Shown one piece after another: positions 41,440-46,459 of a stretch of 64,000 nucleotides of DNA. A program made the position numbers and the translations under genes. Position 1 is the stretch's first letter, and each line of letters opens with the position of its first letter. A model generated the notes under the pieces. It was not told the origin of the DNA, did no database searches, and saw only the letters and a list, made by a program, of their open reading frames with translations. Origin of the DNA: Mantamonas sphyraenae STR306 (Eukaryota > Protista > CRuMs); the NCBI GenBank assembly GCA_026936335.1, contig JAPMXV010000060.1, forward strand, positions 186,001 through 250,000, read 5' to 3'.

Positions 41440-41645
41440 CGGGATTTTGATTTGGGTTGGGTGGGATTGGGGGGGAAAGGGATCCTTGCAAGCCTTGCGG
41501 GCGCTGCCATGCCTCTTCCCGCCGCCCGTCTCAGAGGACGCAGCAGACGCAAGACGCCACACAACCAAACAACAGCAATTCCCGGGACACATACAGGTTG
41601 TTATTCCGTTGTCTCTTCCGGCGCATCGATCACCAATGGGACCGC

Positions 41646-44600
41646 TTAACGGCGGCGGATGGTGCGGGTGCGGACCTTGCGGCCGTTGCACTTGCAGGTG
41701 CACGTGCAGTTCTTGCGGCCACGACGGCCACGACGGCCACGACCACGGTAGCGGCGGTTCACGTTGCGGCGGCAGCGGTTGTAGGCACCACGGTTGCGGT
41801 TGCGGCGGTACACGTACAGGCAGTGGGCGTTGGCACGCTGGCGGTGGTAGGCGCGGTTAGCGTTGGCATGAGCGCGGCGGTACCAGGCGCTGGCGCCACG
41901 GTAGCAGCGGTTGCGACGGTTGCGGTTGCGGCGGAAGCGGCGAGCGCAGTTGACACGACGGCGGCGGTACTGAGCAGCGTACGACCTGCGGCGGTTCATC
42001 AGAGTCGTGTGGGCGCTGCGCAGGGCGCGACGGTAGTGGTACAGAGCCACGGCGTAGCGGTAGCAGCGGTTGCGACGGTTGCGGTTGCGGCGGTAGCGGC
42101 GAGCGCAGTTGGCGCGGGCGCGGCGGTACAGAACGGCGTAGTGGCGCATGGCACGCTGGTGGGCCGACAGGCGGCGGCGCAGCGTGATGTGACGCAGATG
42201 CACACGGCCAAGGCGGCCGTCCACGACGCAGTCAAACATGCGGTACCAGTAGTGCGAGCGCGGGGAACGGGTGCGGCTCAGGTACTGGTTCACCACACGG
42301 CGGCAGGCACCGGCGCGGCGGCGGTACAGGCTGCGGTAAGCCTTGTTGCCGTGGTTGACCAGGGCGCTGTAGCGGCGGTGCCAGTAGCGCTGCTGGGCAG
42401 CGGTGTGGCCACGCTTGGCCTTGTTGCCGTTGCACAGAGTGCCGGCGTTGCCCTGGTAGCCACGCTTGACGTTGATGTACACGTTGAAGTACGTGCGCGC
42501 GCCAGAGCCACCCTTGCGGATGTCCACGGCACCGCCCGGGATGCTGACCACGGTGCGGCCGCGACGGGTGTTGCGGTTGAAGTGGTACACACGGCGGCCA
42601 ACCTTGACGATCACGTACTTGTTGGCAGTGGCGTTGCGCCAGGGCTGGAAGCCCAGCTTGGTGCGCACGTACACGCTGCCACGGCGGTACATGTAGTACC
42701 ACTTGCCGTTGGTGGCGCGGTTCTTCAGGTCGAAGCGCTTGCCGTTGAAGGCAGTGTAGTGCGGGTCACCGGTGGAAGCGCACTTCATGCCGCTGAGGGT
42801 GGCCAGGGCACGGCGGTACCACGTGTAAGCGCTGCGGACGCAGGCGTTGCGGCGGCCAGCGTTGTTGCGGTACGAGTAGCGGCAGTTGTTCACACGGTGC
42901 TGGTAGTGGTAACGCAGGTTCTGCTGCTGGGCACGGCGGCGGTAGGCCACAGAGGCGTTGCGGTAGCACGCGTTGCGACGGCCGTTGTTGCGGTGGCCAC
43001 GGAAGCGGCGAGCGCAGTTGTTGCGCATGCGGTAGTACCACGCGCGGATGGCGGCGTGGGTGGCCGAGTGCGAGCGTGCAATGTGGTGGCGCGTCCAGTT
43101 CAGGTTGAAGCGGGCGTTGGCGTTGCGACGGCAACGGTTGTAGACGCCGCGGTTGTTGTTCAGACGGTACGCGTACAGGCAGTGGGCGTAGGCACGCTGG
43201 CGGTGGTACAGCTGGACGGCGTAGGCACGCACGTGGCTGTACCAATGGCTGGCGCTACGGTAGCAGTTGTTGCGACGCGCGTTGTTGTGGCGACCGCGGT
43301 AGCGGCGAGCGCAGTTGGCGCGGCGGCGGTGGTACTGAGCAGCGTACGAGCGGCGGCGGTTCTGCAGCGTACGCGAGGCGTTGCTGTTAGCACGGCGCAG
43401 CGCAGCGAGGGCGCGCTGGCGCTTGTTGCCGCCGCGGCGCAGCGTGATGTGGCGCAGATGCACACGGCCAAGGCGGCCGTCCACAACGCAGTCGTACATG
43501 CGGTACCAGTAGTGCGAGCGCGGGGTCTTGGTGCGGCTCAGGTACTGGTTCACCACACGGCGGCAGGCAGCAGCGCGGCGGCGGTACAGGCTGCGGTAAC
43601 GCTTGTTGCCGTGGTTGTACAGGGCGCTGTAGCGGCCGTGCCAGTAGCGCTGCTGGGCAGCGGTGTGGCCACGCTTGCCACGCTTGCCACGGGTGCACAG
43701 AGTGCCGTTGTTACCCTGGAAGCCGGGCCTCACGTTGACGTACACGTTCATGTACGAGCGGGGGCCGCGGCCGTGCTTGCGCACAAGCACGTTACCACCC
43801 GGGATGCGGATGTTCTTGGCACCGGGCTGGGATCCCTTGGTGAAACGGTGCATGACGCCGCCAGCACGGACGGTCACAGCCACGTTGGCAGTGTAGCGGC
43901 TCCAGGCGCCAAAGCCCAGCTTGGTGTTGACGTACACACCTCCGCGGCGGTACATGGTGTACCACCTGTTCTTGGTGCTCTTGGCCTTCACGTCGAAGCG
44001 ACGGTTGTAGAAGGAAGTGTAGTGCGGGTCACCGGTGGAGCGGCACGTCAGCATGCGGCCCTCATCGGCGTCCTCCACCTCAGACTCGGTCTCGGGCTCG
44101 GCCTCCTCAAATGCAGACTCGGCCTCCTCGACCTCGGACTCGGTCTCGGGCTCAGCCTCCTCGGCCTCGTCCTCAACCTCCTCCTCCATCTCCGTCTCCG
44201 GCTCCTCAACCTCCTCCGTCTCCGTCTCCGCTGTGAGGTGTCGTTGCCAGCGTGCGAGGAAAAGCGTGAGTTTCCGTTTCTTTGCCGAAAAAAAACCCCC
44301 TTGCCGGAATGATGCGTTTTTTCCCTCTCGGCCTCCTGCAATATCCCCCCTGTCGCTGCTTGTGCAAGTGCACGCGATACGCGCGCCTGTGTGCCAGCTG
44401 CATGACACTCATACAGTGTGTTCCACATTTACCGCGATCCTCTACAGTGTGCCGGTCGCAGAAAAAAAAGGAAACTTCTTCTTGGAGCGAGAGGGTCTCA
44501 AACGCCGGACCCAAACTTTCCTCGCAAACTTACGCGCAAATTCCTCCTCGACATCCGTGGACATCGGGGTAGCATCCATCACGTCGGCGTCCTCCGTAGA

Positions 44601-44762
44601 GGACATGCTCAGGTCCTGGCTCAGCGGGCCAGCGAGTGCAAACGCTGCAAGAAGCAGCACGGCGAAAATTGTTCTCCTCGCAATCCTGTGGAAAAAAAAA
44701 AGTGTGCGTGTGAGTTGGTCGTCTGGTATACGCGGCCCACGGGAATGCTTGCACGTTGGCAT
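41646..44762 (-). CDS. Secreted precursor: signal peptide + acidic pro-piece + extremely basic Arg/Tyr/Asn/His-rich protein with two GDPH VWD-like modules
   Basis: Exons 44762-44755, 44685-44534 and 44230-41646 give MPTIARRTIFAVLLLAAFALA-GP.., then Glu-rich EPETESEVEE repeats ending DEGR, then CRSTGDPHYTSF..RFD and CASTGDPHYTAFNGKRFD. Strong CGC/TAC/AAC codon bias. The first exon is the least certain. Confidence 0.85.
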
Positions 44763-44827
44763 TCGACAATTCCATCCTCCCAACCCCATGCAAGGCGCAC
44801 ACTAAACATGATCCTTTAATCTCATGG

Positions 44828-46459
44828 TCACCTGAGACCCTCACTCACATTGTTTTTCGATGCTTCACCTCGCGCACAAACTCCACGGCTGAACAGTCCC
44901 ACCACCTCCGCCATGTGCGCGCGTGCGCCCACTTCCACCTGCACCGTCGCTTCCCACACCGGAAGCAACTCCTGCGCTGCAACACCTCCGTCACGATCGA
45001 CGTACGGGCACGCGCCGCCGGCAAAATCGATTTCCCACACAAATTCCACCTCGGCAAACGGCAGCGCCCCTGCGTTCAGCAGCTCCGTGACAACCATGCC
45101 GTAGCTCCATACGTCGCCTGCATAGGAGCACCCGTCTCCCACGCGCCTCTCCGGGTCATACTCGGGTGGACGCCATCGCACAGCGCCCACTTCCACCTGC
45201 GCCATGGCTTCCTTATCCCTGCTCAAACGCGCGAATCCAAAGTCACACAGTCGCACCACCTGGCCCTGTGCATCCACAAGCACGTTTAGGCTCTTGATGT
45301 CCCTGTGCACGACGCCGTGCATGTGCAGATGCGCCACGGCGCACGCGAGACTTCTGGCCACGCTCACCGCCTCCGCAGCCCGCTGCACAGGCCGCTGGTC
45401 GTACAGCGACCCCGCACACACGCGCTCCATGTAAATGTGCACCTCGTCTGCCAGCTCGTCCCACACCATTGCCACAGCGTCGACCACATGGCCGTGTTGC
45501 AGCGCACGCAAGGCTGCAAGCTCACTGCGCACGTGCTCCCCATGTGTCTTGCTCAGTTTCGACACGCCACACATCCGTTTGCGAGCAAATACAAGCCTGT
45601 GCTCGTCACCCTGCCATCCCAGCGCCACCACTTCCACCGTGCCGAACCGGCCTTTGCCAGCCTGTCCAACCACCTCCACCTCCACCTCCCCCAAGGCAAG
45701 TGCAGCCTCCACCACGTGCACCCGCCGCTGCCCTCCTCCCTGCGTGTTGCTTCCGCTCTCACCCTCCCTTTCACCCTCGCTCTCGCTGGCAAACTCATCC
45801 TCTTGCAGCGCGTACAGTCCCACCGCACACGCCCACGGCACCACCCATCCGCACTCGGACCAGCGCCACTCTACAACCCCACGCCCTCCACCGTCATCCT
45901 CCACCACAGCCACCCACAGGTCCCCCACCTCGTCGTCGTCGTTGATCTGTACACCCTCCTCCTTCTCTCTCTCCACATGGCAGTGCAGAGTACACTGCTC
46001 CTCCTCCTCCTCCTCCTCTCCTTCCTCTTCCACCTCTTCCAATGCCTCCCACCCGCCGGCTTCCCACTGTGCCAGCTCCTGTACACTCGCCGCCCAAATG
46101 TCCGCTTCCCTCGACGCTCGCTTTCTTCCGTGCAACGCCACAAGCGAACACTCGCCGGGCATGCTTTCCGGCCAGGCATGCGCACGTACCAACGTGCATG
46201 GCACGCCGTACTCACTGCACACCTGCGCCAACAGCTGCGTACGTGCATCACACACGCCCCTCACCTCCCGCTCGCTCCCACACTCGCCCCAGGGCTTCCC
46301 TTGCGCCACACTCATCACTGCCATCTCATACACCCACGACCGAGCCATTCCTGCCCGTCCCGAGTGGCCGCACCTTTCCATTCCGTCCACCCACGCCCGC
46401 ATTCGACCAAACACCACCTCCTCATCCTCCTCAAACCGCTGGTCACACTCCACGTCCAT
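44828..46459 (-). CDS. Ser/Thr protein kinase with an N-terminal EDR1-like segment
   Basis: Kinase motifs GKGRFGTV, FARK, HRDIKSLN, LCDFG, WRPPE and DVWSYG. N-terminal GVCDARTQLLAQVCSEYGVPCTLVR. Start codon uncertain. Confidence 0.85.
   Translation of the reverse strand: MDVECDQRFEEDEEVVFGRMRAWVDGMERCGHSGRAGMARSWVYEMAVMSVAQGKPWGECGSEREVRGVCDARTQLLAQVCSEYGVPCTLVRAHAWPESMPGECSLVALHGRKRASREADIWAASVQELAQWEAGGWEALEEVEEEGEEEEEEEQCTLHCHVEREKEEGVQINDDDEVGDLWVAVVEDDGGGRGVVEWRWSECGWVVPWACAVGLYALQEDEFASESEGEREGESGSNTQGGGQRRVHVVEAALALGEVEVEVVGQAGKGRFGTVEVVALGWQGDEHRLVFARKRMCGVSKLSKTHGEHVRSELAALRALQHGHVVDAVAMVWDELADEVHIYMERVCAGSLYDQRPVQRAAEAVSVARSLACAVAHLHMHGVVHRDIKSLNVLVDAQGQVVRLCDFGFARLSRDKEAMAQVEVGAVRWRPPEYDPERRVGDGCSYAGDVWSYGMVVTELLNAGALPFAEVEFVWEIDFAGGACPYVDRDGGVAAQELLPVWEATVQVEVGARAHMAEVVGLFSRGVCARGEASKNNVSEGLR

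What the first reader, a model, noticed from the sequence alone, without database searches (positions are those of the whole stretch)
41646..44762. Secreted polycation precursor: acidic pro-piece plus 802-aa Glu-free Arg/Tyr/Asn/His protein with twin GDPH-VWD modules
Seen: signal peptide, then about 90 aa of Asp/Glu-rich pro-region ending DADEGR, then a region (44054-41649) with 0 Glu and only 9 Asp. That region is built as two copies of a VWD-like module (CxSTGDPHYTxF..RFD..GTLC), a helical DCVVD block and Cys-pair repeats (NCARRxRxxxNxRRNxCYR), ending CTCTCKC. The two DCVVD blocks (about 42170-42420 and 43430-43680) are near-identical in DNA, and codon bias is the strongest in the window, suggesting high expression. 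Known: GDPH is the autocatalytic Asp-Pro cleavage site of VWD/mucin proteins, acidic pro-pieces neutralise cationic secreted peptides, and Arg/Tyr/Asn-rich proteins such as mussel foot protein 3 coacervate. Inference: a stored, cleavage-activated, self-assembling material (extrusome, adhesive, coat or prey-killing matrix) of a type I do not recognise.
Basis: partly seen in the sequence, partly recalled or inferred. Interest (0 to 1): 0.85.

Follow-up and report, generated by a model that had tools for sequence, protein, structure and literature searches.

The report
Cationic mucin-domain secreted protist proteins
A tiny gliding marine protist encodes a family of secreted, extremely positively charged proteins built from the same domain as our mucus proteins, probably a sticky matrix or glue of a design not yet described.

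Summary
The genome matches Mantamonas sphyraenae (25.06 Mb, 78 contigs). The gene gives a 914-aa precursor: signal peptide, 89-aa acidic block (net -41), then 802 aa with 0 Glu, 9 Asp, 22% Arg (net +198). Both modules are true, trimmed VWD domains (VIA Z 12.8 to VWF; family profile hits FCGBP) with intact C-xxx-GDPH but no Ca2+-site residues, each followed by a 2-Cys helical domain and Cys-pair helical hairpins. It is the most divergent of at least seven VWD paralogues (up to ~4,000 aa), all signal + acidic block + polycation; two have M. plastica transcript orthologues. Cationic GDPH-VWD proteins also occur in Naegleria, Willaertia and Percolomonas. 'Cleavage-activated' is weak: GDPH cleavage stabilises VWD and pieces stay disulfide-linked, the acidic block offsets only 21% of the charge, and no protease site is conserved. 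Best reading: a secreted cohesive or adhesive polycation matrix, working like flatworm Mlig-ap1 or sea-star Sfp1 without being a member of either; function untested. Other readers of this scan noted the paralogues on other contigs.

The parts
44755..44762 (-). Exon 1 (ATG, 8 nt)
   Evidence: intron 1 (44754-44686) has GT..AG, T-tract and an ACTCAC branch-like site; not checked with reads
44534..44685 (-). Exon 2: signal peptide (to about 44628) and start of the acidic block
   Evidence: most hydrophobic 12-mer of the protein, Kyte-Doolittle 3.06 at residue 9; same layout in all paralogues
44433..44441 (-). Possible 9-nt micro-exon inside intron 2 (adds 3 aa, keeps frame)
   Evidence: AG before and GTAAAT after; splits the intron into 92 + 202 nt; lead from s1-591987; unproven
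44055..44230 (-). Exon 3 start: Glu-rich acidic block ending DADEGR
43668..44054 (-). VWD domain 1 (about 129 aa, trimmed, no Ca2+-site residues); GDPH at 44033-44022; Cys4-Cys120 pair
   Evidence: AF2 pLDDT 84; VIA Z 12.8, rmsd 2.5, 116 aligned to VWF; Foldseek top hits MUC2/MUC5AC/RGMB
43455..43667 (-). Helical 2-Cys domain 1 (W..C..DCVVD), in the place of C8; C8-3-like
   Evidence: three helices; family profile hits the C8-3-like domain of neutral paralogue C31 at 15.3 bits, best shuffle 2.7; Pfam C8 not matched
42795..43454 (-). Four Cys-pair helical hairpins (C-x13-15-C), Arg/Tyr/Asn/His-rich
42405..42791 (-). VWD domain 2; GDPH at 42770-42759; 52% identical to domain 1
42195..42404 (-). 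Helical 2-Cys domain 2, 85% aa and 92% nt identical to domain 1
41709..42194 (-). Three Cys-pair helical hairpins and an RG-rich linker
41646..41708 (-). C-terminal CTCTCKC (four Cys left over from the pair pattern), Arg tail, stop
   Evidence: low pLDDT; role in inter-chain links is inference

Best explanation
A secreted structural polycation that forms a sticky extracellular matrix (substrate adhesive or gliding film that also traps bacteria). Shown: signal peptide, acidic block, VWD fold, GDPH, helical Cys-pair rods, gene family. Inferred steps: (1) the precursor enters the ER; (2) each VWD folds and self-cuts at D-P, which locks the domain, with the N-terminal piece, acidic block included, held by strand beta1 and the Cys4-Cys120 bond; (3) the acidic block keeps the chain soluble and packs against the cationic body of other chains, replacing the Ca2+/pH packaging of mucins, whose Ca2+ ligands are lost; it may be kept (block polyampholyte) or trimmed; (4) after release, Arg with Tyr/His/Trp binds anionic surfaces, glycans and bacteria through charge and cation-pi contacts that survive seawater, and spare terminal Cys cross-link chains.
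For: VWD fold and FCGBP homology. Invariant Cys, GDPH, Trp, Cys..Asp in 24 modules. Same signal + acidic block + polycation plan in 7 VWD genes and one VWD-less gene and in M. plastica transcripts. Ca2+-site Asp residues absent in the window's modules and the loop ligands absent in all 24 cationic modules, present in neutral membrane paralogues. Arg-richness kept in relatives from 32-33% GC contigs, so not a GC effect. Tested analogues: Mlig-ap1, K/R-rich plus VWD, cohesive, blocked by heparin (PMC6410801); Sfp1, self-cleaved VWD cohesive protein (PMC9382459, PMC8621496); GDPH-domain proteins in trails of gliding diatoms (10.1101/2023.03.06.531300). Mantamonas glides on substrates, eats bacteria, and no cysts were seen (PMC10492846).
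Against: No localisation, proteomics or expression data for this gene; no ultrastructure exists for Mantamonas (PMC12133344). The match to animal adhesives is by domain and charge only. No orthologue of this gene was found. Related cationic VWD proteins sit in amoeboflagellates with other lifestyles. No polyanion partner or releasing factor was identified. 57 dibasic sites would be exposed to the kexin-type convertases the genome encodes, so the body might be cut into peptides.
Confidence: 0.45

Rival explanations
1. Core protein of an extrusome (mucocyst- or kinetocyst-like): stored as a proprotein, acidic blocks removed by a protease, discharged as an expanding lattice for prey capture or defence.
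For: Pro-protein layout, several co-designed paralogues, internal acidic islands after a [VL]QD motif, long helical rods; proprotein processing builds Tetrahymena mucocyst cores (PMC4142616, abstract); a cathepsin-D-like gene lies about 3 kb upstream of one paralogue.
Against: No extrusomes described in Mantamonas (no EM); no sequence link to known extrusome proteins; no conserved cleavage site; the islands are missing at the matching places of the M. plastica orthologue P0001.
Confidence: 0.2
2. Antibacterial or prey-agglutinating polycation released outside or into the food vacuole, with the acidic block as safety catch and convertases freeing Arg-rich peptides.
For: Net +198; 11 R-x-K/R-R and 57 dibasic sites; two P-domain convertase genes; all named relatives are from bacterivores.
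Against: Helices no more amphipathic than shuffles (486/500 and 318/500 shuffles as high); the acidic block covers 21% of the charge; 3,000-4,000-aa tandem VWD arrays fit a scaffold better than a peptide precursor.
Confidence: 0.15
3. Cell-surface coat or pellicle component: a disulfide-linked cationic layer on the cell or flagellum, perhaps anchored by the neutral membrane-bound VWD paralogues.
For: Two neutral, Ca-site-bearing, single-pass VWD proteins exist in the same genome; other CRuMs have pellicles; three or so haem peroxidase genes could cross-link Tyr.
Against: CRuMs pellicles lie under the plasma membrane, out of reach of a secreted protein; cells are plastic; no interaction shown.
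Confidence: 0.15
4. The antisense frame (41457-44312, 951 aa) is the real gene, or the protein is an unsecreted nucleic-acid binder.
For: A long open antisense frame exists; the protein is protamine-like in charge; the two internal copies differ evenly over codon positions, which does not separate the frames.
Against: The antisense frame follows from zero TTA/CTA/TCA codons in the sense frame; GDPH codons vary only at sense third positions across the genome; the sense frame folds as VWD; signal peptides are present in all paralogues and in the complete M. plastica transcript P0002.
Confidence: 0.03

Closest known systems
FCGBP and gel-forming mucins / VWF D assemblies (VWD-C8-TIL-E)
   Same: VWD fold (Z 11-12.8), C-xxx-GDPH-Y motif, GLC motif, tandem arrays, signal peptide.
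   Different: Domain about 129 aa against about 160; Ca2+-site residues lost; 2-Cys helical domain in place of C8; no TIL, E, PTS or FCGBP_N; net charge +0.25 per residue against about -0.02; acidic N-block.
Macrostomum lignano Mlig-ap1 (cohesive protein of flatworm temporary adhesion)
   Same: Secreted, very K/R-rich, contains VWD; giant size like the paralogues; marine surface-dwelling organism.
   Different: In Mlig-ap1 the charge lies in low-complexity GRK ends around a neutral lectin/VWD-C8-TIL/EGF core; here the folded VWD and helical domains are themselves cationic, there is an acidic block and no lectin, TIL or EGF. No homology test was possible; treated as analogy.
Sea star footprint protein Sfp1
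   Same: Tandem VWD modules, autocatalytic cleavage before secretion, cohesive extracellular meshwork.
   Different: Sfp1 has C8, TIL, lectin and EGF domains and is not described as a polycation with an acidic block.
Diatom GDPH-domain trail proteins (Ac629 of Amphora coffeaeformis)
   Same: GDPH domain in secreted proteins of a gliding unicell.
   Different: PTS-rich, glycosylated, acidic-polysaccharide trails; called diatom-specific; none was among the named profile hits here.
MUC4 / RGM-type VWD without a full D assembly
   Same: GDPH-VWD without C8/TIL/E; weak RGM_C and C8-3_MUC4 matches in the family.
   Different: Those are membrane-tied signalling or mucin proteins, near neutral, single VWD.

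Membership tests
VWD domain superfamily | Beta-sandwich VWD fold | tested here: met
   AF2 pLDDT 84; VIA Z 12.8, rmsd 2.5, 116 aligned; the top 19 rows are all VWD-bearing chains, next row Z 5.7
VWD domain superfamily | Sequence homology to VWD | tested here: met
   family profile hits mouse FCGBP at E 7.5e-36 over several domains; the window protein alone stays below the Pfam cut-off, E 0.03
GDPH self-cleaving VWD | GDPH between strands 1 and 2 with Asp and His intact and a Cys before it paired to the domain | tested here: met
   C4, G8-D9-P10-H11 and C120 invariant in 24 modules; the disulfide itself is inferred
GDPH self-cleaving VWD | Actual Asp-Pro cleavage | not testable with these tools
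   needs reducing/non-reducing gels and N-terminomics
Gel-forming mucin / VWF / FCGBP D assembly | C8 domain (PF08742) after VWD | tested here: not met
   no C8 match at any family locus; structure matches stop at residue 129; only 2 Cys; C8-3-like by profile
Gel-forming mucin / VWF / FCGBP D assembly | TIL and E domains, PTS regions, FCGBP_N | tested here: not met
   no Pfam match; S+T+P about 10%; helical hairpins instead
Gel-forming mucin / VWF / FCGBP D assembly | Ca2+-binding residues (FDG Asp and GLCGNxD..ND loop; motif from own knowledge) | tested here: not met
   loop ligands replaced by basic or neutral residues in all 24 cationic modules, FDG Asp kept in only two C59 modules; both kept in neutral C57/C31 and FCGBP-like hits
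Flatworm ap1 adhesive proteins | K/R-rich regions plus VWD in a secreted protein | tested here: met
Flatworm ap1 adhesive proteins | Core of C-type lectin, VWD-C8-TIL and EGF repeats | tested here: not met
Flatworm ap1 adhesive proteins | Present in the adhesive footprint and needed for attachment | not testable with these tools
   no experiments exist for Mantamonas
DOPA adhesives (mussel Mfp-3 type) | Short disordered Tyr/Arg protein with tyrosinase-made DOPA | tested here: inconclusive
   protein is long and predicted folded; no tyrosinase hit, but the control rang nowhere
Acidic-propiece antimicrobial peptide precursors | Pro-piece that roughly balances the mature charge | tested here: not met
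   -41 against +198
Acidic-propiece antimicrobial peptide precursors | Amphipathic cationic helices | tested here: not met
   hydrophobic moment at or below shuffles

The most novel reading that the evidence does not exclude
Mantamonas glides and catches bacteria with a Ca2+-independent, self-packaging polyampholyte glue: acidic head blocks stay tethered through the GDPH-cut strand and condense the cationic VWD/helical rods until release. A related cationic GDPH-VWD toolkit in Heterolobosea and unidentified protists would make this an old or repeatedly evolved protist adhesive system, parallel to the VWD glues of flatworms, sea stars and diatoms.
Probability: 0.25. Interest if true: 0.82.

Novelty: new variant of a known kind. 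Interest (0 to 1): 0.6.

Why it matters
How small heterotrophic flagellates stick to and glide over surfaces is unknown at the molecular level, and nothing is known of the secreted structures of the deep-branching CRuMs. This family gives named candidates, cheap tests (heparin, polylysine, antibodies, trail proteomics) and a new design of underwater material: folded, disulfide-stapled polycation with its own acidic block. It also extends VWD evolution: a 2016 survey found VWD in few protists and never with C8 or TIL (PMC4948705); here are tandem VWD plus C8-3-like arrays with up to nine modules near the base of Amorphea.

Tried and rejected
The search for homologous proteins with mature residues 1-200 and 120-802 found nothing; it sees only proteins of 0.55-1.75 times the query length. 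The ESM Atlas feature search gave only VWD clusters at 0.83 or less. Pfam C8 and C8-3_MUC4 do not hit the cationic loci. A profile of paralogue Cys-pair repeats hits all seven window hairpins in register, but scores do not beat shuffles (18.9 against 19.4), so homology of the hairpins to the paralogue repeats is likely but not shown. Gene conversion as cause of the 92% block: synonymous identity is above expectation in both parts (72/75 and 55/63), so conversion and constraint were not separated. The spliced model was joined only inside local scripts to check frame and composition; searches used the exon-3 frame by reference. No paper holds both 'Mantamonas' and 'von Willebrand'. The tree is a quick SH-aLRT tree on 196 columns and hits were chosen by a K/R-rich profile, so it does not show one origin for all cationic VWD proteins.

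Full report
Source. The window's assembly has 25,061,354 bases in 78 contigs, matching the published genome of Mantamonas sphyraenae (25.06 Mb, 78 contigs, 59.19% GC; PMC10492846). This is a small marine bacterivore of the CRuMs that glides on surfaces; cysts were never seen and no ultrastructure has been published (PMC12133344).

The observation. On the minus strand, three exons (44762-44755, 44685-44534, 44230-41646) separated by GT..AG introns of 69 and 303 nt give one open frame of 914 aa. Residues 1-22 look like a signal peptide, residues 24-112 carry 42 Asp/Glu (net -41), and the last 802 residues have no Glu, nine Asp, 180 Arg, 76 Asn, 71 Tyr, 37 His and 26 Cys (net +198, pI 11.8). Eight of the nine Asp sit in the conserved GDPH, RFD and DCVVD motifs. 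The two DCVVD blocks are 92% identical in DNA. Codon bias is the strongest in the window (Nc 28.4) but not unique: a CK1-like kinase frame gives 30-32 and paralogues 28-35. The long antisense frame is explained by the absence of TTA, CTA and TCA codons in the sense frame, and GDPH codons across the genome vary at sense third positions. A 9-nt micro-exon at 44441-44433 is possible. Neighbours are an unrelated kinase upstream and a reticulon gene downstream.

The module. Alone, the protein barely touches Pfam VWD (E 0.03). A profile of 24 modules from the genome hits mouse FCGBP at E 7.5e-36 along whole domains, from the Cys before GDPH to the GLC motif. The model of module 1 (pLDDT 84) matches VWF, MUC5B, MUC2, FCGBP and RGMB over residues 1-129 (best Z 12.8, rmsd 2.5, 116 aligned). 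So these are real but trimmed VWD domains. The acidic residues of the mucin/VWF Ca2+ site (motif from own knowledge) are gone from the GLC loop in all 24 cationic modules and from the FDG position in 22, while two neutral membrane-bound VWD proteins of the same genome keep them. After each VWD comes a three-helix domain with two Cys. It is not Pfam C8 but is homologous to the C8-3-like domain of a neutral paralogue (15.3 bits against 2.7 for shuffles). The rest is long helices turned by seven Cys pairs 13-15 residues apart (mean pLDDT 74, pTM 0.32, so the overall shape is not resolved). Four Cys at the C-terminus are left over and could link chains (inference).

The family. Six more loci carry the same cationic module in tandem: three on contig C50, and one each on C43, C6 and C59, with three to about nine modules and frames up to 3,300 aa, some broken by frameshifts in the assembly. 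A 3,000-aa gene on C2 has about 17 Cys-pair repeats and no VWD. Every one begins with a signal peptide and an acidic block. Several have internal acidic islands opened by a [VL]QD motif, one inside a VWD loop. Among 1.84 billion proteins the best hits are two Mantamonas plastica transcript products, orthologous to the C50c and C59 genes; P0002 shows signal peptide, acidic block, three modules and a basic tail in one complete frame. No orthologue of the window gene was found; its two modules form a long branch inside a group of 34 rows that holds all Mantamonas cationic modules (SH-aLRT 95, quick tree). About 30 further hits are secreted cationic GDPH-VWD proteins with the same helical domain and K/R-rich tails, from Naegleria gruberi, Willaertia magna, Percolomonas sp., an unnamed EukProt taxon and environmental eukaryotes; most lack the acidic block. 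Those on 32-33% GC contigs still have 13-16% Arg, so the charge is selected, not a GC artefact. They do not form one clade in the tree, and the profile favours basic sequences.

How it probably works. GDPH cleavage is likely: Asp, His and the flanking Cys pair are invariant. But in FCGBP the cut stabilises the domain against proteases and the first strand stays bound by that disulfide (PMC10880436), so it is a maturation step and not a release switch. Here, and in C59 and P0002, the first GDPH lies within a dozen residues of the acidic block, so after the cut the block would hang on one strand and one disulfide. The block offsets 21% of the charge here and far less in the giants (800-990 Arg+Lys), and no protease site is conserved at its end; P0002 has no basic residue there. 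It is therefore better read as a solubility and packaging block, kept or trimmed, that replaces Ca2+-driven packing. Once outside, an Arg-rich body dense in Tyr, His and Trp should bind anionic surfaces, glycans and bacteria in seawater (inference from known cation-pi chemistry). The helices are not amphipathic, which argues against membrane lysis. The genome has two kexin-type convertase genes and about three haem peroxidase genes; no tyrosinase was found, though that search is inconclusive.

Comparison with known systems. It works most like the flatworm cohesive protein Mlig-ap1, a 5,407-aa K/R-rich VWD protein whose function is blocked by heparin (PMC6410801), and like sea-star Sfp1, a self-cleaved VWD cohesive protein (PMC9382459, PMC8621496); gliding diatoms also leave GDPH-domain proteins in their trails (10.1101/2023.03.06.531300). 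It is not a member of these families or of the mucin/FCGBP D-assembly class: C8, TIL, E, PTS, lectin and EGF parts and the Ca2+ site are missing. A 2016 survey found VWD in only a few protists, without C8 or TIL (PMC4948705), and no held paper links Mantamonas with VWD.

Verdict. Real, well-formed gene; a new variant of secreted VWD matrix proteins with a distinctive acidic-head, polycation-body design shared by a gene family in Mantamonas. Adhesive or gliding matrix 0.45, extrusome core 0.20, antibacterial or prey-clumping agent 0.15, surface coat 0.15, wrong frame or unsecreted 0.03. Other first-stage readers of this scan flagged the paralogues; these notes are not independent support. Interest 0.6.

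Noticed in passing
L051, G000:C50:119700-121000 (+): A secreted cathepsin-D/pepsin-like aspartic protease gene (signal peptide, LRVPL pro-part, DTGS and DTGT motifs) lies about 3 kb upstream of the giant cationic paralogue C50c; candidate processing enzyme or chance neighbour.
   Followed up: no
L043-L044, G000:C2:163000-173000 (-): A 3,000-aa secreted polycation with signal peptide, acidic block, poly(AR) stretch, about 17 Cys-pair helical repeats and GRK repeats like those named for flatworm ap1, but no VWD.
   Followed up: partly
L041 (G000:C57:25544-31357) and L042 (G000:C31:390788-396831): Two neutral single-pass membrane proteins with kelch-like N-part, two GDPH-VWD domains with intact Ca2+-site motifs and C8-3-like domains; possible surface anchors for the cationic family.
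   Followed up: partly
L037, G000:C43:36500-36750 (-): An 85-aa acidic island with two VQD motifs is inserted inside a VWD domain loop.
   Followed up: partly
L033-L034 (G000:C50 about 81020 and 83300), L039 (G000:C6 about 32200): Frame breaks inside the giant paralogues, in repeated modules; assembly errors or real breaks not decided.
   Followed up: no
G000:C29:227189-228721 and G000:C33:79800-90450: About three animal-type haem peroxidase genes (PF03098) in this protist; could cross-link Tyr in a secreted matrix.
   Followed up: no
window 44762-44828: Only 66 nt separate the stop of the upstream kinase frame from the ATG of this gene, very tight for a gene that looks highly expressed.
   Followed up: no
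P0032 (Naegleria gruberi XP_002671385), P0092 (Willaertia magna KAL9649995), P0156 (Percolomonas sp. WS), P0046/P0052/P0058/P0061 (unnamed EukProt taxon): Uncharacterised secreted GDPH-VWD proteins with K/R-rich tails in Heterolobosea and others; a wider, undescribed class.
   Followed up: partly
L059 (ENA ERZ17912254), P0065: Environmental 920-aa protein with tandem GDPH modules and poly(AR) helices, followed on the same strand by a second gene; organism unknown.
   Followed up: no
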